From positions 124,001-188,000 of the forward strand of contig NIVC01000164.1 of the NCBI GenBank assembly GCA_002269645.1: a stretch of 64,000 nt of DNA, given 5' to 3'. Source of the stretch: Macrostomum lignano. Lineage: Eukaryota. The translations under genes and the position numbers were made by a program. A model generated the notes under the pieces. The model saw nothing but the letters and a program-made list of their open reading frames with translations, was not told the DNA's origin and did not search any database. Position 1 is the stretch's first letter, and every line of letters starts with the position of its first letter. Shown piece after piece: positions 679 to 54,603 of the stretch.

Positions 679-13469
<12,791 letters not shown>

Positions 13470-27236: not shown

Positions 27237-29746
27237 CTACTGGCCTCTCTTCACGGTGACGCGATGCCACGCGTTTCCAAGCAGACCCCGAGCATTCCAC
27301 ACCGAGCTCCATCGTTCCGGCTGTTGATTCCCATTATCGTCAACAGCTTTGCAAGCTATGGTGACACTTTGGCCAGGCTTCGGCGCTGGAACCGTCGCCT
27401 CCCAAAGGCGCCAAGCCCAGCGCTGACCGAACGGTTGATGCAAAGAATCATCTACATCGTCAGGAGCATCATCCAAGTTACACCACTGGGCCAATTGCCA
27501 CGTATTGCCGTCGTCCGTGGTCACTTCCACTCGGACTACGCCAGCTCCGGCGCCGCTGAACGCGTAGCCACGGATTTGCACAACTTCGTCTTCGTCGGCG
27601 CCGTAGCCGTCCCTGATCACGTGACCATCTGGCGGCCAACAGATTGCGCTAACCACTGGCCAATAAAGTTGAGCAGGCGCCCGAACGAAATCTTCAACAG
27701 TTGGCGTGTACAAGGATGGTTGAAACGTCTTGTAGTCGCGACGCTGCCAGAAGCTGGAGCTCTCTTGCCGGCTGAGAGCGATGCGGCAAAGCCACTTGAC
27801 GCTGCGGGCTCCGATGGCGCCTGCGATGCCGAGTTTTTTGTTTGATGGATTTCACGCTTTGGTGTTTTATACGGTTTTATCTCGTCAGAATGATTTTTAC
27901 CCTGACTCGGGGGTCGGCTATCAGAGTAAAAGCATTTTGGAGACAAATTTTAGATTAGTTACCATTTATTAACAAGTAGACGCTCATACTAAAGTACGGT
28001 ATGCTGGCAATTCAAGGGTATTTTCAAGTTATTCTCAGAGTTGTGAGGACAATTTTTTTCAGAGATTTTTAGGCTACTCTCAGATGGTTCTAAATACGAT
28101 TATACTATAGTTCAGAAACGATTCTCAGAGCGGTTTAGAGATGATGATGATTCTTATCTAGCCTAGTGACAATTTTCAGAGCTATTTCGAGATGCTTCTC
28201 TGTTTTCCGACAATTAAGACGAGTTCCAAAGCGATTTAGACACGGGTAGATTCTAGACGACTTTCAGTTTAAGTTTAGAAATGGTTCTCAAGCTTAACAC
28301 AGAGCAGTGAACTATCATAGACACAGAAGCTAATAAAGCCACTAACCAGGCACAATAACCCTCAGCGGATACCCATGATCGGCTGGTATCGCCTCTCCGT
28401 TCATCTCGTACGCCAGCAGGAGACCACGCGACTCATCAAGCGCCACTTCCACAGGCACCGAAGCGCCATAAAAGTCGCCTGTAATGCTGTCCCCATCCAT
28501 GCCTTCAAACTGCACATGCCTGTAGCCCAGTTTCCTAGCCTTATCCAAGTCTAAACCAAATAGCTTCTTCAGCACCAAATGCAGAGGCGCGCCAGTCCAG
28601 CGCGCGTTCGACACCGCAGTTTGGCGCCATTCCAGACCTCTAGCTTGACGCCATTGCGCCATCTCGTTGCGCCTATTGCCGGCGCATGCAAGCGTAACGT
28701 CGTAACTAACTCGAGGAAAATCGTTACGCAATTGCTCAACAGTAACGTTTAGACTGCGATTGACTTTCTCTTCATTAGTTGGATCCTTCAGATCCAGTTT
28801 GACCCTGTGGGAATTGGCGTCCTCGGGTAGCTTAGGCACTGGCAGATGGTTTCTAACAAAATGAATGGCATTGGGAGTGTAGTAGTGGTCCATGAGGATT
28901 TCTGGCGGTGACATCGCATTGTAAGGTCGTTTATTAATTGGCACCAGCAGAGGTGAACGTTTTGGCTCGTTGGCAAACTTGCCACCGTCGTCTGATTGTT
29001 CGGAAGCTTTGCGACGCTGAAGCTCAAGAGCATCTGCTGCTGTCAGACGGGCAATGGCGTACTCAGCTAGGATGCTCAGCACGTGCGGAGACTTGTGCAC
29101 CGCGTACAGATCCCAGAATGGTTCGACGTCTTTGCCAGCGGCTAGTAGTATCTTCTCGCCGCCTGGGTGGCTGTCTACGAAGTTGGTCACGTCGTACACT
29201 GTGTTCTGGAGTTGAAGTGAAGTAGCCTGTGGTTACCATTGATCATTACCTGTGCTCACCATTAATTATTTCTTGTACTTAAAAGATGGAACTGTACGAG
29301 TACTCAAGTATCTGTACAGTATAGTAATTATCTTACCAAGCAGCAATTACCTGATAAATAACCCAGACACCTGTCTGCAAGCTGTTGTGCTTTGCAACCT
29401 CTTCTAATGTGACACTGGGCAAATTCGCTGCATTTCCAGGCGTATCCTTTTCTTCATTATTATTATCTTTGTTAACCGCAACAGTCGCCATAGCAACGGA
29501 GGCAGCAGTGGCGGCTACAGCAGCAAAAGTGCCGCCATTTGAGCCGCTTTTTTCTTGGCGTTCCTCGTTTCCATGGCAACGGTTAACCGGGGCTTGATTC
29601 TCTCTAGTAACTGAAGATGACAAGACTCGAAGCTGAGACGGACCAGAAAATGCGTTTAGACGCTGGCTGCTTTTAGAAGCAGCAGCAAGCAGCTGGCGAC
29701 AGCATACCGCTGTCCAAGTGAGATTCTTTAGCTGACGCAAATACAT
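27237..29746 (-). CDS. SUOX: Sulfite oxidase, intact copy 1, about 612 aa, 3 exons
   Basis: Exons 29746-29351, 29205-28347, 27820-27237 (1839 nt). Targeting-like N-terminus, cytochrome b5 (VYDVTNFVDSHPGGEKILLAAG), Mo-pterin domain ([50 protein letters not shown]), dimerisation domain (WNARGLLGNAWHRV). Confidence 0.95.
29484..29580. promoter_or_regulatory. Two RFX X-box consensus matches in SUOX copy 1 exon 1
   Basis: GTCGCCATAGCAAC (29484-29497) and GTTTCCATGGCAAC (29567-29580) both fit GTHNYYATRRNAAC; function untested. Confidence 0.5.
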
Positions 29747-33415: not shown

Positions 33416-35964
33416 CTACTGGTCTCTCTTCACGGTGACGCGATGCCACGCGTTTCCAAGCAGACCCCGAGCATTCCACACCGAGCTCCATCGTTCCGGC
33501 TGTTGATTCCCATTATCGTCAACAGCTTTGCAAGCTATGGTGACACTTTGGCCAGGCTTCGGCGCTGGAACCGTCGCCTCCCAAAGGCGCCAAGCCCAGC
33601 GCTGACCGAACGGTTGATGCAAAGAATCATCTACATCGTCAGGAGCATCATCCAAGTTACACCACTGGGCCAATTGCCACGTATTGCCGTCGTCCGTGGT
33701 CACTTCCACTCGGACTACGCCAGCTCCGGCGCCGCTGAACGCGTAGCCACGGATTTGCACAACTTCGTCTTCGTCGGCGCCGTAGCCGTCCCTGATCACG
33801 TGACCATCTGGCGGCCAACAGATTGCGCTAACCACTGGCCAATAAAGTTGAGCAGGCGCCCGAACGAAATCTTCAACAGTTGGCGTGTACAAGGATGGCT
33901 GAAACGTCTTGTAGTCGCGACGCAGCCAGAAGCTGGAGCTCTCTTGCCGGCTGAGGGCGATGCGGCAAAGCCACTTGACGCTGCGGGCTCCGATGGCGCC
34001 TGCGATGCCGAGTTTTTTGTTTGATGGATTTCACGCTTTGGTGTTTTATACGGTTTTATCTCGTCAGAATGATTTTTACCATGACTCGGGGTCGGCTTTC
34101 AGAGACAAATTTTAAATTAGTTTATTTTGTAGAAATATTAAGTACTGGAAAAGATTGTTTTACAGGGTTGTTTATTGGAAATTCTAGGGTGTCTCAAATG
34201 TGATTCCCAGGGCGACTTTGAGACGATTCTAAGAAGAGCAGTTTAGAGACGATTTAATTATTAGATTCTCAAAACGCTTTCGGGAATCTTATGGGTAGAT
34301 TCTAGACAACTCTCTAGAATCTACAGTTTAGAAACGGTTCTCAGACTTAACACAGAGCAGTAAACTATCATAGACACAGAAGACAATAAAGCCACTAACC
34401 AGGCACAATAACCCTCAGCGGATACCCATGATCAGCTGGTATCGCCTCTCATCTCGTACGCCAGCAGGAGACCACGCGACTCATCAAGCGCTACTTCCAC
34501 AGGCACCGAAGCGCCATAAAAGTCGCCTGTAATGCTGTCCCCATCCATGCCTTCAAACTGCACATGCTTGTAGCCCAGCTTCCTAGCCTTATCCAAGTCT
34601 AAACCAAATAGCTTCTTCAGCACCAAATGCAGAGGCGCGCCAGTCCAGCGCGCGTTCGACACCGCAGTTTGGCGCCATTCCAGACCTCTAGCTTGACGCC
34701 ATTGCGCCATCTCGTTGCGCCTATTGCCGGCGCATGCAAGAGTAACGTCGTAACTAACTCGGGGAAAGTCGTTACGCAATTGCTCAACAGTAACGTTTAG
34801 ACTGCGATTGACTTTCTCTTCATTAGTTGGATCCTTCAGATCCAGTTTGACCCTGTGGGAATTGGCGTCCTCGGGTAGCTTAGGCACTGGCAGATGGTTT
34901 CTAACAAAATGAATGGCATTGGGAGTGTAGTAGTGGTCCATGAGGATTTCTGGCGGTGACATCGCATTGTAAGGTCGTTTATTAATTGGCACCAGCAGAG
35001 GTGAACGTTTTGGCTCGTTGGCAAACTTGCCACCGTCGTCTGATTGTTCGGAAGCTTTGCGACGCTGAAGCTCAAGAGCATCTGCTGCTGTCAGACGGGC
35101 GATGGCGTACTCAGCTAGGATGCTCAGCACGTGCGGGGACTTGTGCACCGCGTACAGATCCCAGAATGGTTCGACGTCTTTGCCAGCGGCTAGTAGTATC
35201 TTCTCGCCGCCTGGGTGGCTGTCTACGAAGTTGGTCACGTCGTACACTGTGTTCTGGAGTTGGAGTGAAGTAGCCTGTGCTTACCATTGATCATTATCTG
35301 TGCTCATCATTGATAATCACCTGTACTCACCATTTATACTCATAATCAACTTTTGCTCGCTATCGACAATCATTTACGCTCGCCATTAACAATCATTGGT
35401 GCACGCCATCGATAATAATTGGCAACTCACTATTTACAAATCATATGTGCTCGCAATTGATCGTCTTTGCTTGACATTGATAATCATTCGTACTCACAAT
35501 TGCTAACTGTCTGTACGCAATATTATTAATCGCCTTTGATAATCATACTCGCAACTGAAAATCACTTGTGTTTTTTATCGATAATCATGTGCTCACAAAG
35601 CAGCAATTACCTGATAAATAACCCAGACACCTGTCTGCAAGCTGTTGTGCTTCGCAACCTCTTCTAATGTGACAGTGGGCAAATTCGCATTTTCAGGCTT
35701 ATCTTTTTCTTCATTATTTTTATCTCTGTTAACGGCAACAGTCGCCATAGCAACTGAGGCGGTTACAGCGGCAAAAGTGCCGCCATTCGAGCGGCTTTTG
35801 TCTTCGCGTTTCTTGTCCCCATGGCAACGGATAACCTGGGCTTGATTCTCTCTAGTAACTGAAGATGACAAGACTCGAAGCTGAGACGGACCAGAAAATG
35901 CGTTTAGCCGCTGTCTGCTTTTAGAAGCAGCAGCAAGCAGATTTTTTAACAAACGAAAATACAG
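33416..35964 (-). pseudogene. SUOX: Sulfite oxidase tandem copy 2, disrupted
   Basis: Same exon layout (35964-35611, 35253-34400, 33999-33416). ATG of copy 1 aligns to CTG at 35964-35962; 5-bp deletion at 34450/34451 frameshifts AYEMNGE to AYEMRGDTS* (stop 34434-34432). Confidence 0.8.
35741..35828. promoter_or_regulatory. Two RFX X-box consensus matches in SUOX copy 2 exon 1
   Basis: GTCGCCATAGCAAC (35741-35754) and GTCCCCATGGCAAC (35815-35828); function untested. Confidence 0.45.
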
Positions 35965-36922: not shown

Positions 36923-38318
36923 TCAAGGTCGACCGCCGTAGTAATTAGGCGGATAATAATATGGCGGCATGGCGGCATGCTGCGGCGGCACGGGCGGCGG
37001 ACCGAACGGTCCCACAGGCGGCATTGCAGGAGGCATGTTGGTAGTCCGATAAGCTGACGAGGCCTGAACAATTCTTTGATTAGAAATCTCGGTAACTTTG
37101 TCAGTTTTAGCCCGCCTAGTGTGATACAGCGCCCTGGCTTCCGTGTATTTATTAATAAACTCCGGCAGGGACATTCGCTTGGATTGAAACTGGTCCAGAA
37201 TTGAATCGCTTTTCTCTTCGGCTTCTAAGCAGGCAGATTGAAGCAGCGAGTGCAGGGTCTCAAGGGATTCGCCCTGCTGACCGCCGGATAGGCGGCTAGT
37301 GAGCTCTCGGTGATGACGGCCCAGATCTGCGGCCTCTTTATGCGCCGAGATCAGAGCTCGGCGACCCTGTTCGATTCGGGACTGCTGGCTGAGATTGTGC
37401 TCAGCCAGGCTGCGATTTGTGGCGCTCTCGGTTAGCTTGACCTCTTGCAGTTTGTTTAACTGGAGTAAAAACAAATTTAAAATGATTGCCAATGATTCTT
37501 GGAGCCAACCGGGGTGTAAATAGTTCATTTTTAGTCACAAAGGCCTACAGCAAAATCGTTCCCTGACAAGCAATGAGGCAATTCTGCCCAATCCGCTGAC
37601 TCCTGAGCACAGCGCTCATAAACACGCTCGCAAAGGGTGTACAGTGGATCTGACTTTGGAATCATCAGACATGTACACTCTCTGACTTAGACATGTACAC
37701 TCTCTGACTTAGACATGTACACTCTGACTTAGACATGTACACTATCTGACTTAGACATGTACACATGTACCTCATGGGTCATTATAGTTTGCTTTCCTAA
37801 GTATTTTCCCACTTTTTTACTGTAAGTTGAAAAATCATTTGATTTTTTTGAAATTTGAAAAATGAAGACTTTCTATTTTTTTCTACTGCTAGTAAAGCAA
37901 AATCAAGATGAACATCGTCTTGTTTCTTATTATTTAAAAAAATACAACTTACAAAATACAAAATTATTTTGTCTAAACAGCTCTTGAAGCACAAATGAGA
38001 TGACGAGGCAATATCATAATGTAATAAAGCTATAGTTACTCCCGCCGTTTACCTATTATATATTTGAATTGCACACACTATTCGTTACAGATTATCATGA
38101 AAAACAAATCTAGAAAAACTTACATCAGTATCGTCAGAGATTAAAGTTTCAATTGTTTGATCATTTAACTTCTGCAAATCTTCGCGTTCCATATTGCGCA
38201 AGAGTCCCAGAACATTGGAGTCAAAGCTGGTGCTACCGCCTCCACCACTGGATTGGCTGGTAGCAGGTGGCATTGGTGAACTGTGGCTGCCCATTGGATA
38301 TGGCTGCTGTCCATACAT
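36923..38318 (-). CDS. VPS37: ESCRT-I subunit VPS37 (Mod(r) domain), about 243 aa, 2 exons
   Basis: Exons 38318-38124 and 37459-36923 (phase 0). SATNRSLAEHNL...LEAEEKSDSILDQF...EFINKYTEARALYHTRRAKTDK resembles the VPS37 C-terminal domain; Pro-rich tail. Confidence 0.85.
37667..37765. repeat. 20-22-nt tandem repeat GACATGTACACTCTCTGACTTA
   Basis: VPS37 intron, 4-5 copies. Confidence 0.88.
37992..38053 (-). other. 62-bp 28S rRNA H69-H71-like bipartite motif, copy in VPS37 intron
   Basis: Ungapped 48/62: arms 17/19 and 22/22, core 9/21. Confidence 0.9.
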
Positions 38319-40639
38319 GATGGTTAATGGAAACCAATTCACTTGATTACAAAACAATTTATTATTGAAGTTATTGCTATATGGTTTAGAAGTACTCAAT
38401 TATGTTCTTTTTTATATCATGAATTTTAAATTAGTTTAATGTTTAGGTGCAAGTTTTGCAAAAATTGGTTGAGAACATTTTTTCTAAAATCAATCACATA
38501 CCTAGATAGCTAGAGACAAACAATTTTTAGTATATAGGAATATAAAGTAAAAACAAAAATATTTTTCATAATGTTTTTGCATTCTTGCTGTTTTTGTCCA
38601 TGCCAATGCTAATGTCTAATCTCCAGCATAGAATATAGATCATATGTTAACTATTTGGTAATCTAACTCAACTGTTTGTCTATTATTATCAAATAGTAAC
38701 AACAGCTAGTAATGAAACATTGAAACATAGTCTGGCACAAAGATTAAAATTTTTCTAGAAATAAGCAGCTGTTTTATCATTTCTTTTTTGTATTTATTAC
38801 TTCTATTGGTACTTTTGTTAGGATAGATGAATGTAGACAGTTAGGAGTTAGAAGCTTTGAATATATTTTGGTAGAAATTTTTATATATGATATAGGGGCA
38901 TTGACAAATGGTCAATAAAAATAAGATAATTGTAAAAATCCACAATAAATGCCTCAATAAGGGTCAGACTAAGAGTTCAAAATAAACAAAAAAAGAAAGC
39001 CTACAATGAAAATACAAAAAAACATTTTAAAAAGCATAGTTAAAAATTAAAAAGAAAAGGACATAGTATGGGCTCTTTAAATTATTCTATACTAAATGCA
39101 AACCAACTATAACAAGTTTTTTCTTTTCACTTTGAATATTAGCAACTCAGTTATGCATATCAATAAATTAATCAAGAAATAAACAATTAAATATTATGTC
39201 AATTGTTAAATCAAATAAATAATACCATTACACTGAATTGTCAATTTGTTTGCTTGCATAATGAATTCATAGCAGCTGCAGGTAACTGCATCCCTAGATC
39301 CAAAAAGGAGGCAAAAACCATACTCAAGAAGGTGGCAAATGCATACCAGAATGAAATTTAGGTAGTAGTTGATTGCATGCTAAAATATGACAAAAAAGTG
39401 AAACTATGTAACAGATTCATTTTTACATGCTATACTATCCATTTGTATATTAGAATGTATGCCAAGCAATGCCATAGGCAAGGGGGATAAGGGGATATAC
39501 CTCCTTGTAGGGCTGTGGGCACAGTGGATAGTGCATGTAATTGTATAAAAGTTATATTACATAATACATAAAGCAGTAGTCTTACTAGTTATATGCCTCT
39601 ATAAAAATGTCTAGCTATGTGCATATTAAATGTACAATATAATGGAATAACTTCATTTATTGTCTTCCTTGTACCCCCAATAGAGGCTATATACTATGTT
39701 TAGCCATCATATTTTAGTGAGAAATTCTAACCACTATTCTACTATCTGATTAAGAGTACTTCATCTATGCTTTTTTACTGCAAAACTGCATTATTTCAAA
39801 TAGATTTTTCAATGAATATTACAAACTGCTCATTTTTCATTGCTATTTGCTACTGTTATCTAGTTGCTGTATAACTATAATGTTTTACTATTAATACTTC
39901 CCATAAGCATAGATTTTAATCATAAATTTTCTATCTCTGGACTTTTTTGACAAATGTATATATGTATATACTAGGCCCCAAGGGCAGATTTAAAGGGGGT
40001 TGGAAAGCAGTTGCAGTTGGTCACCTTTTTCTTTTTGTGGCTAGCAATGATAGTACATATTTAAAATAAAATATATTTATTTTATTACTACCTACGCTGC
40101 TTTTTGTTTGTTAAATATAGTACCATTTTTAAAATATGCCTTTAGTGTATACAATTAGGTGATACCATATTGTCTATAATATATTTAAAAGCAAACATTG
40201 TTTATAAGTTTTTCAATACAATTTAAGCTTATGCCATTTAAGAGCTAAGTTATTTACCATTTTTAGTTATTTTTGTTTTTCCATGTGTCTATTAGCCTTA
40301 TAGGGAATGGAATCTATAGTTCAGATTATGTATTAGTATAGGCCTATGCTAGGTCTAATACTAGAAAAAAATACAAAATCTTGTTTGTATCCATAGGCCT
40401 AGTATAGATCATGCTTGGTGCACACCCAAACAAAAATTGAAAAGTTACTAATGCATGCCAAAAATTTAGTGCATGCCTACACTCTCAAATCTATGCTAGT
40501 ATTGTGACAATAAATAACATTTTTGCATTGCCACAGTAATTGACCTATATTGTGTTACATAAAGAATCCTTTTTGATAGATAATTTGGTTGCTTTTTTAT
40601 CTTACTTGTCTATATTATCTTAAGTAGAAAATTGATACA

Positions 40640-42492
40640 CATACATGCGCAACTTCTGAAATTACGCTGGCCGTGCGACTTAGTTTTCGATAAAAAATGC
40701 GACTTACCTATGAAAGAGCCAAGCAAAAACTTTAGGTAAACGGCAGGAGTAACTATGACCATATTTTTAAAGCTAAAAGCCTCGCCAGCTAATTAGTGCT
40801 GCGTGCAAATTCCGCGTTTTTATAACAGCTAATCAGTGTCATCTAGTGGCGGCATGAAGCAATTAGTAAATTGTCAGTACAGTGTAGTGAGCATACTACA
40901 AAAGTCATGATTCATGAATGTCCAGAAGTAAGTGAAGTGAATACAGTGTGACCTATAGCTCAAGAACGATTTGCTAGACGATTTGGCATGGAAGATGAGA
41001 GCCCTGATTCAGATGGCTCATCAGATGCAGAATACGAATCCAGTAGAGATACAAGCTGTGAAAACCCACAGATTTTTAAACCACTGAATTCTAATTCCCG
41101 GAACTATTTTTGCATAGATTCTAAATTTGAAGTCATGCTCATGAACAAAAACTTGTTAACAGTTAGGAAAAAGGCAAAGATGGGAGTAATGCATGTTAAA
41201 CTAAGATTTGAGGCCTTTGCAAATTCTCCCCATTCCTCAATCTTCTCATCCTCTTTTTCTTTTCTCTCTCATCCCTTATCCCTTCTCTCTTTCCTCTCCT
41301 CTCTCCTCTCTTTCCTCTCCTCTCCTATCTCTTCTGTCTCCTCTCTACATTCTTATCTCTCCTCTCGTCTCTCTCCATTCCACTCTACTCTCTCATCTTA
41401 TCTTCCCTCTCGTCTCTCTCCACTCTCTTCTCTCATCTACTCTCTTTCCTCTTTCCTCTTTCCTCTCTTCTGATCTCATCCATCATCTTTTCTTTCCTCT
41501 TTCCTCTAATCTCCTCTTCTCTCTCATCTCTTTTTCCTCCCTCAGCTTTTCTCTCCTCTTCTATCTTTTCTCCCATCGCATCGCTCGCCTCTCCTCTGTT
41601 TGCTTATCTCTAATCTTCTATTCCCTCTACTTTGAGGTAAGAAAATATGCACATATTTTTGCTGAAGATAAGAGGAGAGAAGAGGGCATTGAGGAGAAAG
41701 GGTAGAGAGAAAGGGGGAGAAGAGAGGAGAGTAGAAATGAGAGGAGAGAGAAGAGGGAAAAGGGGGGAGAGAGAGGAGGGGAGGCAAGGTAGAGAAGAAG
41801 AGAGAGATGAGAGTTGAAGAGACACCAACCTTGCTAGTTAGGAAGTTTCAAAGAACCCAAGGGGCGAGGGCCAGATAGAGGGGCTTCGCGAGCCGGAGTT
41901 TGCCAACCCCTGCTCCAGAGTTTAAGAAATCAATGGGAAACTGTTGACGTGGGCTTCTGATTTCAAAGATCTTGTCTGTGGTTGAAGGCTTCTATTCTGT
42001 TTTTGCTCTCCTGCCACACTTGCACCTACTACCCCCTGATTGCCTCTGATTGTGACTTACTTCCCTCTTATTGCGACTTAGTTGCTTCTTTTTGCGACTT
42101 ACCTAATCCTTTTGCGACTTAGCTGATCCTTTTGCAACTTACCTGATCCTTTTTGCGACTTACCTGATCCTTTTTGCAACTTACCTAATCCTTTTGCGAC
42201 TTACCTGATCCTTTTTGCGACTTAGTTTGCTTCTTTTGCAACTTACCTGATTCCTGTTGCGACTTACCTGATCCTTTTTGCGACTTAGTTTGCTTCTTTT
42301 GCTTCTTTTGCGAATTGTTTTTCTTTTGCTTCACCATTTTCCCTGAACTGCTCTTTCTTTCACTTTCCTCTTGCCTTTCTTGGTTCTTGTGTTTTTCTGT
42401 TTTTGGTTGACTCAATTTTGTGACTTACCACTGGTCAGCCACGATTTACGGTGGCCGGATCAGCCAGGTCGGCCAGCAGTTGCGCATGTATG
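40640..42492. mobile_element. Non-autonomous hAT-like DNA transposon, 1853 bp
   Basis: 15-bp perfect TIR CATACATGCGCAACT, 8-bp TSD TTGATACA (40632-40639, 42493-42500), GCGACTTA subterminal repeats at both ends. Confidence 0.85.
40735..40796 (+). other. 62-bp 28S rRNA H69-H71-like bipartite motif, copy inside hAT-like element
   Basis: Ungapped 49/62: arms 21/22 and 16/19, core 12/21. Confidence 0.88.
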
Positions 42493-42844
42493 TTGATACA
42501 CATAAACATTTGTTTAAATGCTATGTTACAAGCTTAAAAAATAGAAAGCTTGAAATTTACACTTCAAAAAAAAACTTTAAAAAATATTTTTTTACTTATA
42601 AGTAACACTAACTCTTTTGCATGATTCTATAAAGTGGACACTAGATGTGTATGTATACTACAAGTATTTTCTTAAGAATCTTGTACACTAACTATACATG
42701 CCAACTTTTGGCATGCAAGGCCAATATATGCCCAAATGTTTTTCTGTGGGTTTGTATATTAGAACTAAAAATATGTCATTGACACAATGTTTCTGGTGTG
42801 TCATATACACCAAGATAAATGATGCTGAAAAATGGCAAGTACCC

Positions 42845-44185
42845 TTGTTGTACATGGATGCATGCAAATTTGGCATCAAACAAATTTGGCAACAGAAATT
42901 TAACATGGAAAAATTTAGCTAAAGCAAATTCAGCGACAATCAAGGCAAATTTAACAACATCTTTTTATAGCTTAAGACAAGTTAATGCAAATTACATATA
43001 ATAAAGGCTTTCTCAAAATGCTGGTAAAAGTTTATAAATGTAAAAAATGGCTGCAAAGGAGTGTTAAAATAACCAAAAAGTGTGTTGTTACAATGGATAT
43101 CCTGCATATTTTGAGAGTATGGTATATCTACAATGTACATAGTATATGGGGACCACTTGAAATTTTAAAATTGTCATTTTTCTTTGCATGGCATATTTTT
43201 GCAAATCCCTTTCTCCAACATTGTAACCAATGGAAAGACCTTATTAGGTATATAAGAAAATTGTTTTTCTCATTTTTACAAGTCTCAAAGGTCTTTGCTT
43301 ATTACAAGGCTCCCAACCTTAAATTAAAAAACATTTCTTGGAAGGCAGTGCTTATCCCCACGGTACCGTAGGAATAATTTCTGTCTTATTCCAACGGTAC
43401 CGTGCGAATAATTTTCTGCTTATCCGCACGGCACACTGACGAGATAGCTGCCCTATCTTCTACATATGCCGTGGGAAGTTTAGTACATACGATTTGAGTG
43501 CAGTATAACAACTTTGTTGAATTATTGTTGAATAAGTATACAGAAGGGTATCAGTAAAGCAGAATAACACGCATTTACACATGCATATACTAGTCTAGAA
43601 CTGATTTGAGTTTATACATCAAGATCAACAGCTTCTTAGTATCCTCAGTTCAAATTCCCTTTCAATAAGCTATAAACTATTCACGCACAGCATATTATAG
43701 CAGATAGGGCAGCTAGTAAAGCAGAGGGAATAAAGCAGAGGACGTGTAGGGCAGCTATCTTGTCAGTGTGCCGTGCAGATAAGCAGAAAATTATTCCCAC
43801 GGCATATGTAGAAGATAGGGCAGCTATCTCGTCAGTGTGCCGTGCGGATAAGCAGAAAATTATTCGCACGGTACCGTTGGAATAAGACAGAAATTATTCC
43901 TACGGTACCGTGGGGATAAGCACTGCCTTCTTGGAAAGGACTTGCAAAACTCACAAGGATTAATGATAGATAAAACAAACTCAATTAAAAGGGAAAGCTA
44001 ATATGCATTGAAGAATACCATTGCATTAAAGTAATTATCTAAATTATACACAATTTTTCCTTTTATTAATTGTCGCCAAATTTGCCTAGATTGTTGCTAA
44101 ATTTGCTTTTGTTAAATTGGTCCATTGTTAATCTCTGTCACAAATTTGTTTGTTACCAAAATTGGTTAGCACCCATTGTACACTA
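42845..44185. mobile_element. Older degenerate inverted-repeat element hosting the Mutator-like MITE
   Basis: About 42845-42960 and 44070-44185 are diverged reverse complements with repeated CAAATTT motifs; no TSD identified. Confidence 0.5.
43344..43927. mobile_element. Mutator-like MITE, 584 bp
   Basis: 134-bp perfect TIRs (43344-43477, 43794-43927) starting GGCAGTGC; 9-bp TSD TTCTTGGAA (43335-43343, 43928-43936). Confidence 0.88.
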
Positions 44186-45255: not shown

Positions 45256-48200
45256 ATGTCTGATAACCAAAGACCTTCCAACAATGGACACGGTCACATA
45301 ACGGCTTCATTAAGTACAGGTTTGACGTTACAAAACAATGCTCAAGGAGGAGCACACTCTCGATGGATTAAACTTAATGTTGGTGGCAAAACATTTGTTA
45401 CAACCCGATCAACATTATTGCAGTACAATGAATCTTTTCTAGCAAGACTTGTTCAAGAAGATTCTGTCTTGAAAAGTGACAAGGTATTTTTTTACTGCAT
45501 AAACTTTATTATATTTAGTTGTTTTCACCTATAATTAACAATTTGTTGTGTTTTTTGTGTGGAATAGGCCTAACTATGGTCATTTTCTATGAAACAGATT
45601 TAAATAGGCCTACAAGTTTTATTTTACTAATATTTTATATTATAAAATATTAATATTAAATTTTAAAATATTAAAATATTAATATTTTAAAAGTTGCAGT
45701 ATATGGCAGGAGCAAACTTTTTTGATAGGAATAGTTTTGGCGTATAGCGCAAGCAAACTTTTTTGATAGTGTTCTGCCATAAGGAAGGTCCATATACCGT
45801 AGCCGTAGCCGTAGGCAAAACTATGGCTTATTCCAATTCTCTGTATTCCGTAGCCATAGGGACCCCAATATTACCATATTCCCATAGTTCCCATAGCCAT
45901 AGCCATAGTTTTAATAAAAAGTATAGAAAACAAAATATTTTGAATCAAGAAGATAACCTCCTTTGAAAAGAACTATGACAATATGGTAATATTGGGGTCC
46001 CTATGGCTACAGAATATGGAGAATTGGAATAAGCCATAGTTTTGCTTATGGCTATGGCTACAGTACATGGACCCTCCTTACAGCGGAACACTACCTTAAA
46101 CAATTGCAAATTAAGTTAGAAAATAAAAGAAACACTTAATTGCCTTTGTAAGATTATATTTCGTCTTTTTTCAGCAACAATAAATTGTTATTGAAAGTAC
46201 TAATGCTGAACTTTTTTACATTAAAAATTAGTTTGCTAGTGTTTAATTGTACTAATTAGCCTAGGTATATTTCAAGAGTTTCTAAGTTAACATTAATAAC
46301 TATGGCTATGGGAATCTACGGAATGTGACAACAACTACCATATTTCCATATTTGTAGCCATAAGAGCAGCTAGCTACTATAGGCATATCCGTAGCTGCCA
46401 TAGGCACCTTATTTTACTATATTTGCCATAGCATAGGATCCTGTAGCCGTAGCTACGACTATGGCAGAACACTATTTTTTGATAAGATATGTTCCAGCAC
46501 ATGATATAATCAAATTTTTTTGATAGGATTCATTCTAGTGTAGACGTGCCATGATCTTGACTATGGTGATATATTTGCTTTTATGCTTGCTTATTTCTTT
46601 ACCCCCCATTGCTGCTTGGTTAGCAAGATTTGATAGCCTTTGCTATTATATCATTATTGTGTCTATACCATAGTGCGGAAGGATGGATATATGATGGAAA
46701 TTTCTGTCATACACAAGGATCACCTGTCGTACATATCATACATCACTCTTTTTTGGGGGTGCTATATTGTACACAAGTCAAACATCAAAAAGTATTTTTT
46801 CATTAACCATAGTTTGTAAGTCATTTCCATATTTAAAACTCATTCATTATGGCACTGTTGCCAATGAAAGAAAAATCACAAACAAAATTCATGCATAAAA
46901 AAACTTTTATATTTGTTTTGTTTTCCTAACTGATGTGCATTGTGTGCAGTCAGTAAATAACAACATAATTGTTGTTTTACTTTGCACTTTCTAGAAAATT
47001 AGAATATATTTATATTTATATTCATGTTTATTCCTATCATACCCTATTGTATACTAGTAGTACCATTTTCAATCCCCATCCTACTGTCGTATAACAAGTC
47101 AAATTTTTTTTATTAAAGTTTTATTGTATACAGACATCCTTCTGCACTATGGTGTCTTTATTAAAGGCAGGGGGGTTGTGTGCACCCTGGCGCACTTTAA
47201 GCGACATAGGCACACAACCGGCGAGAGGCATTACTGCCCATTCCGCCGACTCCCCTGAGCAGGCACACAAGCGCGCGGATACGTACGCAGTCATACGCAC
47301 AGGCACACACTCACACAGGAGTGTACAGCGACCCTAACTTTATATTATCGTTAGGCATGTACACTTCACTGCGCCTTGGGGGGTTGGCTCTCAAGGCCGT
47401 TAATTGCACGAGCAGAGCCAAGCCGAGATTCCAATTCAGCCCCAAATTAATGTGACTGCACTTGGAATCGAGCCTGGGTCGCTGGCACACCAGAGCAGCT
47501 GCGCTACCGCTGGGCTATGGCCCCCTACTATGGTGTCTATAGTCCAAAAGAAAATGTATTGTTTCAGTTTTATCAAATTGTTAAATGTGGGAAAGATTTA
47601 CTCAAGCCTATATTCTCAAAGCTTAGCAGATTTTATACAGGTATGAATAATGTGTGTGCAAGAATACATATAATTAAACAAACTGTATAGTATAAGCATA
47701 GTCTTCCTCCAATGTGCAAGTTATTCTTATAAGTCTTCTTATAAACAAGACTGTTTTGTGCTAATGCACATTTGTGCTAGAAGACTGTAGTTGTTAAAAT
47801 TTAGTCTATTGAGCTTAGCACTTAGTCCAACAGGTGCAAAATTTTTGTATCATTGACTGCTTTGTGTTGAACTATCAACCAATCCAATCTGAGTTAAATT
47901 TCTTCTCATTGGCTAAAAAAGAAATGTTGCTGTCTGTGGGGTGCATTCAAATAGAAGACATATATGCACAAGTATACATAACAATTTAGGTAAAGAACAA
48001 TTATTACATTTGTCTGCTCTAGAAAGTCAATTTAAATAAAAACAAATTTGTCAAATGCTTGTTTTCACATTTGCTGTTGTGATATTTGGTATTTGGTATT
48101 CATTACTTATGTTTAATTTTTCTAGTCATTTTGTAAGCTTCTATGGGTTATTTAGCTTTCATTCCTTTGTAATTAAAAATATATTTTTTAAATGAAATTA

Positions 48201-49265: not shown

Positions 49266-49327
49266 CTAATTAGACGACGAGGCAATAGCCTTTACATATA
49301 CAGCCCTATTTACTCCCACCTTTTACC
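49266..49327 (-). other. 62-bp 28S rRNA H69-H71-like bipartite motif, copy downstream of KCTD
   Basis: Ungapped 45/62: arms 18/19 and 18/22, core 9/21. Confidence 0.85.
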
Positions 49328-49747
49328 CTCAAAATTATTTAGAAACCCCGTGTACAGGAATTCTTGGCTGTAATTTTCTTAATTAGTCTAAAGCATAGTC
49401 TGAGTTTGATTTCACTCCAACACCAGAGCTAATTTGAAAGCCCAGCTAATTTCCAGATATTATTATTGTTATTAACTGAAATTCTCGTATTATTTTGTTT
49501 TCACATTTTATTTTCAAATTAACGAATCGTAACTTTTGTACCTTTCTGTTGGGCTTCAGCTTCACAACGAGGCGTAAAAATTTCCGTATTTAAAAAAATT
49601 CTGATCAAATCCTTTTTGAAGCGAAGTTCAATGAGATTTTTTATAACAAAGTATTACGTATTGAAGTTGTTTCTCGCTCATTTACCGTAACTGATGAATT
49701 ATCTTTCCACTTTGAAAAATAAAGTGGTTTTTTTACAAACTGAAATA

Positions 49748-50960
49748 TTCTGAGGTGTTAGCGGCGCCTTCTGAAGGATTCTGAGGTGTTAGCGGCGCCT
49801 TCTGAAGGATTCTGAGGTGGTAGCGGCGCCTTCTGAAGGATTCTGAGGTGTTAGCGGCGCCTTCTGAAGGATTCTGAGGTGGTAGCGGCGCCTTCTGAAG
49901 GATTCTGAGGTGGTAGCGGCGCCTTCTGAAGGATTCTGAGGTGGTAGCGGCGCCTTCTGAAGGATTCTGAGGTGTTAGCGGCGCCTTCTGAAGGATTCTG
50001 AGGTGTTAGCGGCGCCTTCTGAAGGATTCTGAGGTGGTAGCGGCGCCTTCTGAAGGATTCTGAGGTGGTAGCGGCGCCTTCTGAAGGATTCTGAGGTGGT
50101 AGCGGCGCCTTCTGAAGGATTCTGAGGTGTTAGCGGCGCCTTCTGAAGGATTCTGAGGTGTTAGCGGCGCCTTCTGAAGGATTCTGAGGTGGTAGCGGCG
50201 CCTTCTGAAGGATTCTGAGGTGGTAGCGGCGCCTTCTGAAGGATTCTGAGGTGGTAGCGGCGCCTTCTGAAGGATTCTGAGGTGTTAGCGGCGCCTTCTG
50301 AAGGATTCTGAGGTGTTAGCGGCGCCTTCTGAAGGATTCTGAGGTGGTAGCGGCGCCTTCTGAAGGATTCTGAGGTGGTAGCGGCGCCTTCTGAAGGATT
50401 CTGAGGTGGTAGCGGCGCCTTCTGAAGGATTCTGAGGTGGTAGCGGCGCCTTCTGAAGGATTCTAAGGTGGTTGCGGCGCCTTCTGAATGATTCTGAGGT
50501 GGTTGCGGCGCCTTCTGAAGGATTCTGAGGTGGTTGCGGCGCCTTCTGAATGATTCTGAGGTGGTTGCGGCGCATTCTGAAGGATTCTGAGGTGGTAGCG
50601 GCGCCTTCTGAAGGATTCTGAGGTGGTAGCGGTGCCTTCTGAAGGATTCTGAGGTGGTAGCGGCGCCTTCTGAAGGATTCTGAGGTGGTAGCGGCGCCTT
50701 CTGAAGGATTCTGAGGTGGTAGCGGCGCCTTCTGAAGGATTCTGAGGTGGTTGCGGCGCCTTCTGAAGGATTCTGAGGTGGTTGCGGCGCCTTCTGAAGG
50801 ATTCTGAGGTGGTTGCGGCGCCTTCTGAAGGATTCTGAGGTGGTTGCGGCGCCTTCTAAAGGATTCTGAGGTGGTTGCGGCGCCTTCTGAAGGATTCTGA
50901 GGTGGTAGCGGCGCCTTCTGAAGGATTCTGAGGTGGTTGCGGCGCCTTCTGTAGGATTCT
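49748..50960. repeat. 31-nt minisatellite TTCTGAGGTGGTAGCGGCGCCTTCTGAAGGA
   Basis: About 39 highly homogeneous copies. Confidence 0.96.
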
Positions 50961-51689
50961 CATCTGCTCAATCGTTATGTAAAGAAGAAAAAGGACAAAT
51001 GACAAGAAAAAAGAAAAAGAAAGAAAAATGATGTCATGCAGTTATACCCATAAACTTCCTAGATAATTTGACACCTATCACGTTTCCATTGACTTTAACC
51101 GTCCTTTATACGTTGATTTTTTGCTTATCAAAACAGGCCTAAAATATTTAATCACACATTTGTTTATCAATCGTCATGATTCGATGCTATTTAATATCCT
51201 GCGCATACTACTTATTCCTGCTAGCTACTTATTATTCCGATCATACTCTGTCTAATATTAATTTGGAATCACATGCTTTTTCTAGTTTGCAAAATGGTTT
51301 ATTTATGTAGCTCTTAGTAGCCTACAAAAATGATGCGCTTTCTTAGTACTCTATGTGTTAACATGTTATAACAATCAATTAGTAGTTCATCGACCCGTGC
51401 TTGATATAATCTTTGGAATATAATTTGATTTCTATCTAAATAGAAAAGCCCTCTCGTGCCTCTACTTATATATTTTCATACTTTGCTATTAACTTATTTA
51501 ATATATTTAATATATTCTATGCATAGTTTCTAACTTACCTACAAACAAATTTTAAAAAGATATTTGCTTAAAATTATTTTTATTTTTTCTTGAAAATGTG
51601 TATTAAAGTCTTAATCCTATTCGGAGAATTTACACTACTCGGGTGAATAACATCAGTTGCTCTTGTCAAAGCTCTCAGATTTGTCTTTC

Positions 51690-52672
51690 AAAAGGATAAT
51701 CTCCTTTGAGATTCTTCTCTAAAAAAAAATTTTCTCTCTTGAGACTCTTCTCTGAAAAGGATAATCTCCCTTGATTCTTCTCTGAAAAGGATAATCTCCC
51801 TTGATTCTTCTCTGAAAAGGATAATCTCCCTTGATTCTTCTCTGAAAAGGATAATCTCCCTTGATTCTTCTCTGAAAAGGATAATCTCTCTTGAGATTCT
51901 TCTATGAAAAGTATAATCTCCCTTGAGATTCTCTGAAAAGGATGATCTCCCTTGAGATTCTGCTCTGAATAGGATAATCTCCCTTGAGATTATCTGAAAA
52001 GGATGATCTCCCTTGAGATTCTGCTCTGAATAGGATAATCTCCCTTGAGATTCTCTGAAGCATAATCTTCCTTGAGTTTCATCCAAGAAAAAAATAATCT
52101 CCTTGTGATTTTTTTCTTCTCTGAAAATGATAGTCTCTCTTGAGATTCTTCCCTGAAAGGATAATCTCCCTTGAGATTCTTCCCTGAAAGAATAATCTCC
52201 CTTGAGATTCTTCTCTGAAAAGGATAATCTCCCTTGAGATTCTTCTCTAAAAGGATAATCTCCCTTGAGATTCTTCTCTGAAAAGGATAATCTCCTTTGA
52301 GATTCTCTGAAAAGGATAATCTCCCTTGATTCTTCTCTGAAAAGGATAATCTCCCTTGAGATTCTTCTCTGAAAAGTATAATCTCCCTTGAGATTCTTCT
52401 CTGAAAAGGATAATCTCCCTTGAGATTCTTCTCTGAAAAGGATAATCTCCCTTGATTCTTCTCTGAAAAGGATAATCTCCCTTGATTCTTCTCTGAAAAG
52501 GATAATCTCCCTTGATTCTTCTCTGAAAAGGATAATCTCCCTTGAGATTCTTCTCTGAAAAGGATAATCTCCCTTGAGATTCTTCTCTGAAAAGTATAAT
52601 CTCCCTTGATTCTTCTCTGAAAAGGATAATCTCCCTTGATTCTTCTCTGAAAAGGATAATCTCCCTTGAGAT
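51690..52672. repeat. 30/32-nt minisatellite GATAATCTCCCTTGA(GA)TTCTTCTCTGAAAAG
   Basis: Ends about 420 bp upstream of the boule ATG. Confidence 0.94.
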
Positions 52673-53094
52673 ATGCCATATAAAGCTCCAAAGGAAAGAC
52701 CTTTATTTAAGATTCGTCCGTCAAACGCAGTAAAGAAGATTTTTGAGTAAAGAAGAAAATTTTGAGAATCGTAGCGATATAATATGGCTCTACCTTCGCT
52801 GTTCATGCTGTAAGAGTCGCTTACGTATGTTGGGTATAATAAGTACTTGCGCACTGAAACCAATGATGTGTCATGCTTGACATAGTTTGTTTATGCGATA
52901 ATGGACTCCAACTGTGTCCAGTTGGCCCCATAGACAGGATGAGCAACTGTTCGCCACAGCTGGGCAGCTGAGCTCGGGCCGCGCGGGACCGCTCGATCTG
53001 GCTTATCAAGTTAGTTATTAGGTTTTAAGAGAAGCGCTGGTCGTCAGTCAGAAATCTTGCTCTCATCGAAGCGTATTCAACGGAAGTACCCGCC

Positions 53095-54153: not shown

Positions 54154-54187
<34 letters not shown>

Positions 54188-54603
54188 CAGATAATGGCAA
54201 CGATTCCCCCATCTCGTCCATTGATAACGGTATCTGCAGTGGCCTGGGAATCTACGGCATCATCGGTTCGCCTATGCAGCAGCAGCAGCAGCAGCAGCAG
54301 CAGCACAGTTATAAATCTGTCGGCAGTTTCGATTTCCTTGGTGGCAATTTCAGCAGTCCACCAACTCCGTCGTGCTGCTATTCATCCAGCAGCAGGGCTG
54401 GTAATGTTAATAGCGGCAACTCTGGCTCATCATCTTCGGCCTCATCCGTGCTGTTTAACCAGCTGCAGCCGCAGGGACAGCAGACATCGAAGTCGCAGCA
54501 GCAACAGCAGCTGCTGGACTGCAGCGAGCTGCTCTTTGGCAGCATTGGTCCGTTTGGTGAACCATCTCGTCACGAGTTCAAGCTTCTGGACCATCGCTTG
54601 TAA
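53095..54603 (+). CDS. boule: Boule/DAZ-family RRM protein, intronless, 502 aa
   Basis: Single ORF; RRM NRIFVGGI...IISDKTGVSKGYGFVTFET...FKDRKLNISKAVKK is the DAZ/Boule signature; long low-complexity tail. Confidence 0.8.

What the first reader, a model, noticed from the sequence alone, without database searches (positions are those of the whole stretch)
37992..38053. Dispersed 62-bp 28S rRNA mimic: conserved arms, fixed spacing, R2/I-PpoI target core erased in every copy
Seen: four unlinked copies (6520, 37992, 40735, 49266) align without gaps over exactly 62 nt to the conserved LSU segment GGTAAACGGCGGGAGTAACTAT-GACTCTCTTAAGGTAGCCAAA-TGCCTCGTCATCTAATTAG (reference from memory). Arms match 147/164 (90%; here 17/19 and 22/22). 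The 21-nt cores match 40/84 (48%) and differ from one another. Flanks are unrelated, with no other rDNA nearby, and both orientations occur relative to host genes. Known: this core contains the I-PpoI homing-endonuclease site (CTCTCTTAAGGTAGC), the R2 retrotransposon insertion site and the Pokey TTAA, and closes helix 69/71. Inference: passive rDNA debris should decay uniformly and gain indels. Two kept arms 21 bp apart (two helical turns) instead suggest a bipartite binding site or cleavage-resistant decoy for an rDNA-targeting or domesticated R2-like protein. An alternative is a scaffold with a variable 21-nt guide, or an rRNA-pairing RNA. Four loci in 64 kb would imply a very high-copy family that I do not recognise as described.
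Basis: partly seen in the sequence, partly recalled or inferred. Interest (0 to 1): 0.92.

Follow-up and report, generated by a model that had tools for sequence, protein, structure and literature searches.

The report
Dispersed disarmed copies of R2 target
The flatworm Macrostomum lignano carries scattered copies, about 62 bp long, of the piece of its 28S rRNA gene where R2 jumping genes land; each copy has well-kept flanks but a wrecked or deleted cutting site, and they look like decaying relics, not working genes or protein decoys.

Summary
It is incomplete, though. The window comes from Macrostomum lignano and holds six loci, not four. Three or four units sit in one Par-3 intron, with cores of 12, 13 or 52 nt, so the spacing is not fixed. 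The cores were not replaced: they are still more 28S-like than chance (p=5e-5). The loss is concentrated in the 9 bp just upstream of the R2 nick. That stretch is at chance-level identity in four units and deleted in three.

Comparison of the three homeologous copies of the locus argues against present-day function. The arms change as fast as their flanks, and c4 has lost 3 bp from one arm. Copy c3 is missing from both homeologs because it rides inside a 1.85-kb transposon with terminal inverted repeats. I found no RNA structure, snoRNA boxes, target-site duplications, terminal repeats or poly(A).

Best reading (about 0.4): these are relic ectopic copies of the R2 target that survived only with the nick site disabled. 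They spread by local duplication, hitch-hiking and genome duplication.

Main rival: a tiny retroposon mobilised by R2-lineage enzymes through conserved 28S-derived ends. How the first copies left the rDNA is not shown. A genome-wide census and the species' own R2 and rDNA sequences are needed.

The parts
37992..38053 (-). Unit c2 (the finding). It is a 28S-like unit, arm1 22/22, core 21 nt (9/21), arm2 17/19. It lies in intron 1 of the VPS37/Mod(r) gene, 70 nt downstream of the 5' splice site, and reads 28S-sense relative to the host gene.
   Evidence: The gene model is confirmed by an exact protein match to PAA89109.1. The unit is present in both homeologs with a single change, G(-25)A in L004.
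6520..6581 (-). Unit C. Arms have 3+3 mismatches and the core is 21 nt (10/21). It starts 32 nt inside the Par-3 intron and reads 28S-antisense relative to the host gene.
6671..6763 (-). Unit B. Arm1 has 1 mismatch and arm2 has 3, with 52 nt between them. It is best read as two fused units, B1 (about 6711-6763) and B2 (about 6671-6716). Each lacks 9 nt at about -9..-1 of the 28S core.
   Evidence: (nhmmer E=6.6e-7).
6792..6852 (-). Unit A, the most decayed. Arms have 5+3 mismatches and the core is 13 nt, with 9 nt missing around the nick. It extends 8 nt further upstream into 28S (CAAGC-CG).
   Evidence: (E=2.2e-5).
40735..40796 (+). Unit c3. Arms have 1+3 mismatches and the core is 21 nt (12/21). 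Similarity to 28S runs on to about 40803. It lies 92 nt inside the left end of a transposon and is absent from both homeologs.
49266..49327 (-). Unit c4. Arms have 4+1 mismatches and the core is 21 nt (9/21). It lies 303 nt downstream of the KCTD stop codon. It is present in all three homeologs, where it has gained 4 substitutions and a 3-bp deletion in arm2.
40644..42492 (.). 1.85-kb non-autonomous DNA transposon that carries c3. Terminal inverted repeats are ACAT(ACAT)GCGCAACT / AGTTGCGCATGT(ATGT). The target-site duplication lies within TTGATACACAT (6-11 bp; the exact limits are ambiguous). There are ten TGCGACTTA subterminal repeats. The unoccupied site is intact in homeolog L004.
6488..6886 (+). 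399-nt intron of the Par-3 (multi-PDZ) gene. More than half of it consists of units A, B and C.
   Evidence: the best annotated relatives are PARD3.
37460..38123 (-). Intron 1 of the VPS37/Mod(r) gene, host of c2. It also holds a 22-bp tandem repeat at 37667-37764.

Best explanation
These are relics: a small family of dispersed DNA copies, 62-70 bp long, of one segment of the 28S rRNA gene. That segment is the landing site of R2 retrotransposons, from about -35 (once -44) to about +30 around the R2 nick. They are not genes, and nothing indicates that selection maintains them today.

Shown:
- They derive from 28S along their whole length.
- They spread passively in three ways: by local duplication inside one intron, as cargo of a DNA transposon with terminal inverted repeats, and through the recent genome duplication.
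- Since that duplication they have decayed at about the rate of the surrounding DNA.

Inferred:
- Each copy began as a near-perfect ectopic R2 target. The arms carry only ordinary decay of 5-20%.
- A copy with an intact upstream recognition motif and nick site at the right distance is a substrate for an R2-type endonuclease. Such copies were either cut and misrepaired again and again, or were lost once an R2 inserted into a gene.
- What survives are copies whose 9 bp upstream of the nick are deleted (A, B1, B2), which also breaks the critical motif-to-nick distance, or are mutated beyond recognition at unchanged length (C, c2, c3, c4).

Not shown: how the first copies left the rDNA. My best guess is a reverse-transcription product of the R2 type, because the copies lack target-site duplications, poly(A) tails and terminal repeats.
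For: Origin from 28S:
- Arms are 90% identical to 28S. Cores are 48% identical against 27% for shuffles (p=5e-5). The reference sequence is verified.
- Only this rRNA segment occurs in the window.

Damage centred on the nick:
- The R2 nick lies between core positions 13 and 14.
- Identity to 28S is 10/16 at -13..-10, 11/36 at -9..-1 (chance level) and 19/32 at +1..+8 (p=0.008).
- Units A, B1 and B2 each lack 9 nt at about -9..-1.
- The RASIN motif TTNANNT is broken in every copy. A(-3) is changed in 4 of 4, and T(+1)->A, the change that abolishes R2Bm cleavage, is present in 3 of 4.
- R2 5' junctions typically show deletions of upstream target and added nucleotides.
- The RUM-to-nick distance is critical for cleavage.

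No present constraint:
- Among the homeologs the arms have 4/79 variable sites plus a 3-bp deletion, against 17/503 in the flanks.
- Arm substitutions are of all types.

Passive spread:
- c3 lies inside a transposon insertion bounded by terminal inverted repeats and a target-site duplication. The insertion is absent from L004, where the unoccupied site is seen, and from L005.
- c2 and c4 are present in all three homeologs.
- A, B and C are neighbours, and A and B share the 9-nt loss.

Other points:
- There are no target-site duplications beyond chance, no terminal repeats and no shared flanks.
- R2 elements exist in flatworms, including families that are not site-specific.
Against: - No R2 element or rDNA of M. 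lignano could be examined, so an active R2-type endonuclease in this lineage is assumed, not shown.
- Nicks are normally repaired accurately, and breaks repaired by end joining give indels. Four copies with about 50% substitutions at exactly 21 nt are therefore not what simple misrepair predicts.
- The core edges are also 40% diverged, four times the arms, so the damaged zone must be about 20 bp wide.
- Since the genome duplication the core of c2 has not changed at all, so no hypermutation is going on now.
- Some derived states are shared between copies: A at -36 in C, c2 and c3; GTGC instead of GTGA at the 3' end in B, c2 and c3; C(-7)A in c2, c3 and c4; and AA at -1/+1 in C, c3 and c4. This points to descent from common non-rDNA masters, which favours the retroposon rival, unless these changes are convergent.
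- The sample is six loci in 64 kb.
- The exit route from the rDNA is unknown.
Confidence: 0.4

Rival explanations
1. A minimal retroposon of the R2 lineage. On this reading the 62-nt unit is the mobile entity, or the 3'-terminal module of a non-site-specific R2-type element. Its 28S-derived ends are what the reverse transcriptase needs: a downstream arm to anneal or prime, and an upstream arm for the 5' junction or ribozyme P1. The ends therefore stay 28S-like in the active masters while the middle drifts. Inserted copies then decay neutrally.
For: - The arms are conserved across copies whose cores differ at near-chance level.
- Inserted copies show no constraint, as expected if selection acts only on the masters.
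- Derived states are shared between copies.
- Target-site duplications, poly(A) tails and terminal repeats are absent, as in R2-type integration.
- The 3' end is nearly constant and the 5' end slightly variable (-35, -36, -44).
- Precedents exist. Processed R2 RNAs can start up to 36 nt upstream in 28S, and junction variants are then inherited. Flatworms have non-site-specific R2 families, and some fish R2 elements carry 28S-derived sequence in the 3' UTR. A small RNA tag is enough for R2Bm reverse transcription.
Against: - No unit is joined to R2-like sequence, and there is no RT open reading frame in the window.
- There is no stable RNA fold of the kind R2 proteins recognise.
- Known non-autonomous R2 derivatives (SIDEs) keep a ribozyme and a 3' UTR and insert into 28S.
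- Loss of 28S identity is graded and centred on the nick. It is not uniform across a freely drifting middle.
- c2 and c3 share flank states but have unrelated cores (7/21).
- Three or four units in one 399-nt intron look like local duplication, not separate insertions.
Confidence: 0.22
2. One reading: a host-maintained two-part DNA site that binds an R2-type or domesticated rDNA-binding protein but cannot be cut, acting as a decoy or regulatory site.
For: - The upstream arm holds the RUM, and the specified bases A-31, G-27, C-26 and A-22 are kept in 5 of 6 units. 9 of 10 substitutions fall on tolerated positions.
- The RASIN is destroyed in all units.
- Four units keep the 21-bp spacing.
- The units cluster in introns.
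Against: - Spacing is 12-13 nt in three units.
- The arms change as fast as the flanks among the homeologs, and c4 lost 3 bp of arm2.
- The RUM pattern weakens to p=0.06 once the G/C mutation bias is allowed for.
- The downstream arm is dispensable for the first nick by R2Bm, so conservation of both arms is not explained.
- One unit is transposon cargo.
- Hundreds of perfect sites in the rDNA would swamp any decoy.
- Selection cannot hold many sites that are each nearly neutral.
Confidence: 0.07
3. Small RNAs that pair with 28S rRNA: intron-encoded RNAs resembling box C/D snoRNAs with two long antisense arms, together with their pseudogenes. Alternatively, sense RNAs that soak up snoRNAs.
For: - In the Par-3 intron all units are antisense to 28S on the transcribed strand and are clustered, as snoRNA paralogues are.
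- From general knowledge of rRNA modification maps, both arms cover known 2'-O-methylation sites.
- Unit B has a C-like UGACGA and a CUGA directly after the 22-nt antisense arm.
- There is a weak SNORD2-like hit on unit C (E=5).
Against: - C and D boxes and a terminal stem are absent in five of six units.
- Nothing reaches the Rfam thresholds.
- Folding energies are no better than shuffles.
- c2 is sense to 28S relative to its host gene.
- Arm substitutions do not preserve wobble pairing in either orientation.
- The core is homologous to 28S, so the whole unit is a copy of 28S and not a guide placed between boxes.
Confidence: 0.06
4. A scaffold carrying a variable 21-nt guide, with constant handles and a programmable middle.
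For: The arms are constant, the cores are variable, and four cores are exactly 21 nt.
Against: - The cores are decayed 28S, not novel sequence (p=5e-5).
- No core matches anything else in the about 150 kb available.
- Core length is 12-13 nt in three units.
- There is no RNA structure.
- The cores are identical among homeologs and show no sign of diversifying change.
Confidence: 0.02

Closest known systems
The canonical R2 target site in 28S rDNA (RUM + RASIN; Wilkinson et al. 2023, PMC10499050)
   Same: The sequence is the same over -35..+27. The RUM (-34..-22) is essentially intact in five of six units, and the RUM-to-nick distance is kept in four.
   Different: The units sit in introns and intergenic DNA, not in rDNA. 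The RASIN cleavage motif is destroyed or deleted in every unit. No R2 is inserted in any of them.
rDNA orphons and dispersed rRNA pseudogene fragments
   Same: These are also non-rDNA copies of rRNA gene sequence that decay neutrally.
   Different: Here only one segment of about 65 bp occurs. It occurs repeatedly, with nearly the same ends, and it decays non-uniformly around the R2 nick. Ordinary fragments come from random parts of the rDNA and decay evenly.
R2 SIDEs and other internally deleted non-autonomous R2 derivatives (Eickbush & Eickbush 2012, PMC3414825)
   Same: These are also short elements whose RNAs are bounded by 28S sequence and depend on the R2 machinery.
   Different: SIDEs keep the 5' ribozyme and the 3' UTR (hundreds of bp) and insert into the 28S site. 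The units here have neither part and are dispersed.
Non-site-specific R2 families of flatworms (R2NS-1_SMed, R2NS-1_CSi) and fish R2 families with 28S-derived sequence in the 3' UTR (Kojima et al. 2016, PMC5035012)
   Same: They show that R2-lineage elements can insert outside rDNA in flatworms, and that 28S-derived sequence can become part of an R2 element.
   Different: Those are full LINE elements with open reading frames. No R2 sequence adjoins the units here. The fish 28S-like segment lies upstream of the canonical site inside the 3' UTR.
SINE28 and other transposable elements that carry rDNA-derived modules (review PMC10946416)
   Same: These are interspersed repeats that contain a piece of 28S.
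   Different: SINE28 derives from the 3' end of 28S and has a SINE architecture. The review lists no element that carries the segment around the R2 site.
Gene-fragment cargo of DNA transposons (Pack-MULE-like capture)
   Same: Unit c3 sits as cargo 92 nt inside a non-autonomous element bounded by terminal inverted repeats and a target-site duplication.
   Different: This applies to only one of the six units. The superfamily of the carrier is undetermined (target-site duplication 6-11 bp).

Membership tests
Functional R2 target site | Upstream recognition motif (RUM; consensus A-31 WWW GC NNN A-22 for R2Bm) | tested here: met
   The specified bases are kept in C, B, A, c2 and c3. c4 has C(-26)T. 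Caveat: the consensus comes from a silkmoth R2, not a flatworm one.
Functional R2 target site | Cleavage motif RASIN (T-6 T-5 N A-3 N N T+1) | tested here: not met
   A(-3) is changed in 4 of 4 units with a 21-nt core, and T(+1) is changed in 3 of 4. The region is deleted in A, B1 and B2.
Functional R2 target site | Fixed distance between RUM and nick | tested here: inconclusive
   The distance is kept in C, c2, c3 and c4. It is 8-9 nt shorter in A, B1 and B2.
Box C/D snoRNA | C box (RUGAUGA) and D box (CUGA) next to a terminal stem, with the guide ending at D or D' | tested here: not met
   By reading, only unit B has a C-like UGACGA and a CUGA after the guide, and its stem is at best 3 bp. 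Rfam gives nothing at gathering scores, and the best hit is SNORD2 at E=5.
Box C/D snoRNA | Intronic, on the transcribed strand of the host gene | tested here: inconclusive
   A, B and C fit this. c2 is on the opposite strand, c3 is in a transposon, and c4 lies downstream of a stop codon.
MITE / class II non-autonomous element | Terminal inverted repeats and a target-site duplication | tested here: not met
   The two arms are not inverted copies of each other. No terminal inverted repeats surround the units. No flanking direct repeat exceeds chance.
SINE | Internal Pol III promoter (A and B boxes or 5S type), a LINE-derived or A-rich tail, and a target-site duplication | tested here: not met
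   No A-box or B-box match was found by inspection. ARAGORN was not run. There is no A-rich tail and no target-site duplication.
R2 SIDE / non-autonomous R2 | HDV-like ribozyme at the 5' end, R2 3' UTR at the 3' end, and insertion at the 28S site | tested here: not met
   The unit is only 62 nt, has no fold better than shuffles, and its insertion sites are introns. The species' own R2 was not available for comparison.
rDNA pseudogene fragment (orphon) | Continuity with neighbouring rDNA and uniform decay | tested here: not met
   Similarity stops within 0-8 nt of the unit ends. Decay is strongly non-uniform (p=1.4e-12).
Host-maintained binding site or decoy | Purifying selection on the arms at orthologous or homeologous loci | tested here: not met
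   The arms show 4/79 variable sites plus one 3-bp deletion, against 17/503 in the flanks, across three homeologs of c2 and c4. Statistical power is low at 2-5% divergence.
Any of the above | The species' own 28S has the canonical core | not testable with these tools
   No M. lignano rDNA was reachable. The segment is taken to be nearly invariant among animals (stated in PMC3774820).

The most novel reading that the evidence does not exclude
The units are a new kind of dispersed element linked to R2. One version: they record an R2-type endonuclease attacking stray copies of its own target, with damage confined to about 20 bp around the nick and the binding arms left intact. The other version: they are the smallest known non-autonomous retroposon, 62 nt long, which an R2-lineage reverse transcriptase mobilises solely through 28S-derived ends.
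Probability: 0.3. Interest if true: 0.8.

Novelty: new variant of a known kind. Interest (0 to 1): 0.5.

Why it matters
R2 is the model site-specific retrotransposon and is being developed for gene insertion, so what happens at off-target copies of its site is a practical question. If these units are stray targets that survived only once disarmed, they are a natural record of R2 off-target activity and of which target positions matter in vivo. If instead they are a 62-nt element moved by R2-lineage enzymes, they would define the minimal sequence such enzymes need. In either case the family escaped the published repeat annotation of this genome, which discarded families shorter than 200 bp (PMC5730564). 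If the census shows only a few dozen neutral fragments, this is a minor curiosity of a repeat-rich genome.

Tried and rejected
- Chance or artefact: rejected. In 100 shuffles neither arm reached its observed number of matches, and mutated versions of the units are present in three homeologous contigs.
- A larger repeat around the units: rejected. MAFFT and blastn with short words find no shared flanks.
- General scatter of rDNA debris: rejected. Only this segment gives hits, though most probes were written from memory.
- RNA hairpin or miRNA-like fold: rejected. z-scores are -0.6 to +1.4 on both strands.
- Rfam families: none found.
- Terminal inverted repeats or target-site duplications around c2, c4 and A-C: none found.
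- Cores as guides: no matches elsewhere.
- Spliceosomal intron-like unit (AG|GTAAAC...TTAG|): dropped, because c2 and A end in TTTG and several units are antisense to their host gene.
- Pol III A/B boxes, hammerhead motifs and Helitron ends: no match by inspection.
- R2 ribozyme cleavage at -36 as the cause of the 5' end: not supported for flatworms, since the planarian R2 is reported to cleave at -28.
- Searches outside the window for the family: metagenome contigs with a pattern that excludes the true core gave 0 hits, and viral contigs gave 0.
- More M. lignano DNA: only homeologs of window 27-64 kb could be fetched.
Full report
**Source of the window.** A 502-aa open reading frame in the window (53095-54603) is encoded on contig NIVC01000164.1 of assembly GCA_002269645.1. 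That is the Mlig_3_7 genome of the flatworm Macrostomum lignano. The protein belongs to the same 90% cluster as boule-like protein 2. The window also holds a Par-3-type multi-PDZ gene, two sulfite oxidase genes, a VPS37/Mod(r) gene, a KCTD gene and a dynamin gene. The genome is rich in repeats and recently duplicated. Its published repeat annotation discarded families shorter than 200 bp.

**The observation.**
- The 28S reference recalled from memory is correct. It matches an 84-bp R2 target duplex printed in a 2024 preprint.
- The counts are exact: arms 147/164, cores 40/84, and this copy 22/22 and 17/19. The arm/core contrast gives Fisher p=1.4e-12.
- Neither arm reached its observed number of matches in any shuffle.

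Read on the minus strand, the 399-nt Par-3 intron (6488-6886) holds three units.
- Unit A has a 13-nt core.
- Unit B has 52 nt between its arms. It is better read as two fused units with 12-nt cores.

A profile search finds these six loci and nothing weaker. Spacing is therefore not fixed, and the copies are not all unlinked.

**The cores.** The cores were not replaced by unrelated sequence.
- Their identity to the 28S core is 0.48, against 0.27 for shuffled cores (p=5e-5).
- They also resemble each other (0.42 against 0.29, p=0.0015).

The whole unit is therefore a copy of 28S whose middle has diverged about five times more than its ends. Flanks are unrelated. About 1.5 kb of other conserved rRNA stretches, written from memory, give only chance-level hits. 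The ends are nearly but not exactly constant: unit A continues 8 nt further upstream into 28S and c3 about 7 nt further downstream.

**Mapping onto R2 biochemistry.** Pre-cleaved oligonucleotides in a 2026 kinetic study place the R2Bm first-strand nick at TTAAGG|TAGCC, between core positions 13 and 14. With that numbering the unit runs from -35 to +27.

The cryo-EM study of R2Bm reports the following.
- An upstream motif (RUM) lies at -34..-22, with consensus A-31 WWW GC NNN A-22.
- A cleavage motif (RASIN) lies at -6..+1, with consensus TTNANNT.
- The distance between the two is critical.
- The sequence downstream of +6 is not needed for the first nick.

In the units:
- Identity to 28S is 10/16 at -13..-10, 11/36 at -9..-1 (chance level) and 19/32 at +1..+8 (p=0.008).
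- Units A, B1 and B2 each lack 9 nt at about -9..-1. All seven units therefore lack a recognisable stretch just upstream of the nick.
- A(-3) is changed in all four units with a 21-nt core. T(+1)->A, the change that abolishes R2Bm cleavage, is present in three of them.
- Inside the RUM, 9 of 10 substitutions fall on W or N positions. The p-value is 0.006 if all sites are equally mutable, but only 0.06 if mutation is confined to G/C sites. This is suggestive at most.

**Test of constraint.** M. lignano carries three homeologous copies of this region. I retrieved them through the boule-like, KCTD and VPS37 proteins.
- c2 is present in all three, with one change in 62 nt, at an N position of the RUM.
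- c4 is present in all three, with four substitutions and a 3-bp deletion in arm2.
- Pooled, the arms show 4/79 variable sites plus the deletion, against 17/503 in the flanks.

At this low divergence the test cannot prove neutrality. It does argue against strong purifying selection, and c4 is plainly decaying.

**Copy c3 is transposon cargo.** c3 is missing from both homeologs. The window carries 1,849 bp (40644-42492) that contig NIVC01001835 lacks, and the unoccupied site there is intact.
- The insertion has terminal inverted repeats (ACATGCGCAACT...AGTTGCGCATGT).
- It has a target-site duplication within TTGATACACAT.
- It has ten TGCGACTTA subterminal repeats.
- c3 lies 92 nt inside its left end.

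At least one unit therefore reached its present place as cargo of a DNA transposon after the genome duplication.

**Readings I could exclude or weaken.**
- RNA structure: folding is no better than shuffles on either strand.
- Known RNA families: Rfam finds nothing.
- snoRNA: only unit B shows anything like C and D boxes. Orientation relative to host genes is mixed: A, B and C are antisense to 28S in the Par-3 transcript, while c2 is sense in the VPS37 transcript.
- Base pairing: arm substitutions are of all types and do not preserve wobble pairing.
- Transposon hallmarks: there are no target-site duplications, terminal inverted repeats or A-rich tails.
- Guide function: the cores match nothing else in the DNA I could reach.
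- Other collections: searches of metagenome and viral contigs for the same architecture found nothing.

**Best explanation (confidence 0.4).** The units are relic ectopic copies of the R2 target.
- The arms carry ordinary decay of 5-20%.
- The middle was destroyed because a stray copy with an intact RUM and RASIN at the right distance is a substrate for an R2-type endonuclease.
- Such copies are either scarred until they resist cutting, or are lost.
- The survivors either have altered spacing (the 9-nt deletions) or have a heavily mutated nick region at unchanged length.

This accounts for the damage being centred on the nick, for the deletions, for the lack of present constraint, and for cores that are unrelated even between copies that share flank states. 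R2 5' junctions are known to carry deletions of upstream target and extra nucleotides, and flatworms have R2 elements.

Weak points:
- R2 was not shown in this species.
- Misrepair that yields only substitutions over about 20 bp is unorthodox.
- The route out of the rDNA is unknown.

**Main rival (0.22).** The unit is itself a minimal retroposon, or the 3' module of a non-site-specific R2-type element, whose 28S-derived ends are required for mobilisation.
- Precedents: R2 RNAs can begin up to 36 nt upstream in 28S, and junction variants are then inherited. Flatworms have non-site-specific R2 families, and some fish R2 elements carry 28S-derived sequence in their 3' UTRs.
- In favour: derived states shared between copies, and the lack of target-site duplications and poly(A) tails.
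- Against: the graded loss centred on the nick, the absence of any adjoining R2 sequence, and the clustering of units in one intron.

The host-decoy, snoRNA-like and guide-scaffold readings receive 0.07, 0.06 and 0.02.

**Verdict.** The link to R2 is supported by the sequence. The proposed function is not. I rate it a new variant of a known kind (dispersed rDNA-derived repeats), with moderate interest that depends on a genome-wide census and on the species' own R2 and rDNA sequences.

Noticed in passing
window 40644-42492: A 1.85-kb non-autonomous DNA transposon. It has 12-16-bp terminal inverted repeats, a 6-11-bp target-site duplication and ten TGCGACTTA subterminal repeats. Inside are an orphan 161-aa open reading frame (40988-41473, no Pfam hit) and a CT-rich tract followed by a GA-rich tract. 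It is present only in this homeolog, so it moved after the genome duplication. The superfamily is undetermined.
   Followed up: partly
window 40022-43079 against L005 7578-7579: Homeolog NIVC01000434 lacks a 3.06-kb block that contains the transposon above plus about 1.2 kb of flanking DNA. That flanking DNA is present in the window and in L004. No clear target-site duplication is visible at the junction, so this could be a deletion or an older nested insertion.
   Followed up: partly
window 49740-50960 and 51690-52672: Two satellite arrays: a 31-bp unit in 39 copies (97% matches) starting about 410 bp from unit c4, and a 30-32-bp unit in about 32 copies. They produce long spurious open reading frames on the minus strand (50285-50575 and 51688-52863).
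   Followed up: no
window 37667-37764: A 22-bp tandem repeat in 4.5 copies (AGACATGTACACTCTCTGACTT) lies in the same VPS37 intron as c2, about 230 nt from it.
   Followed up: no
window 28342-29199 and 34432-35247: Two tandem sulfite oxidase gene copies (Cyt-b5 plus Oxidored_molyb domains) lie on the minus strand. UniProt entries in the VPS37 protein cluster (P0070, P0073) are sulfite oxidase-VPS37 fusion models, probably annotation run-ons.
   Followed up: no
window 53095-54603: A single-exon gene for boule-like protein 2 (macbol2). Three homeologous copies in the assembly are at least 90% identical; the window copy is 97% identical to P0003.
   Followed up: partly
window 45488-45513: A 26-nt AT-rich stretch is 85% identical to a conserved 18S segment (blastn E=0.002 with a probe written from memory). 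It is probably chance, and it is the only other rRNA-like hit.
   Followed up: no
L003 6471-6532 / L004 258-319: In the third homeolog, unit c4 has lost GTC from arm2. The stretch from arm1 position 18 to core position 1 differs in all three homeologs (AAATAGG, AAACACA, AGACAGG), a local cluster of changes denser than in the flanks.
   Followed up: partly
window 6518-6582 (+): A weak Rfam match to SNORD2 (15.7 bits against a gathering score of 37, E=5) covers unit C in the orientation antisense to 28S. I judged it to be chance.
   Followed up: yes
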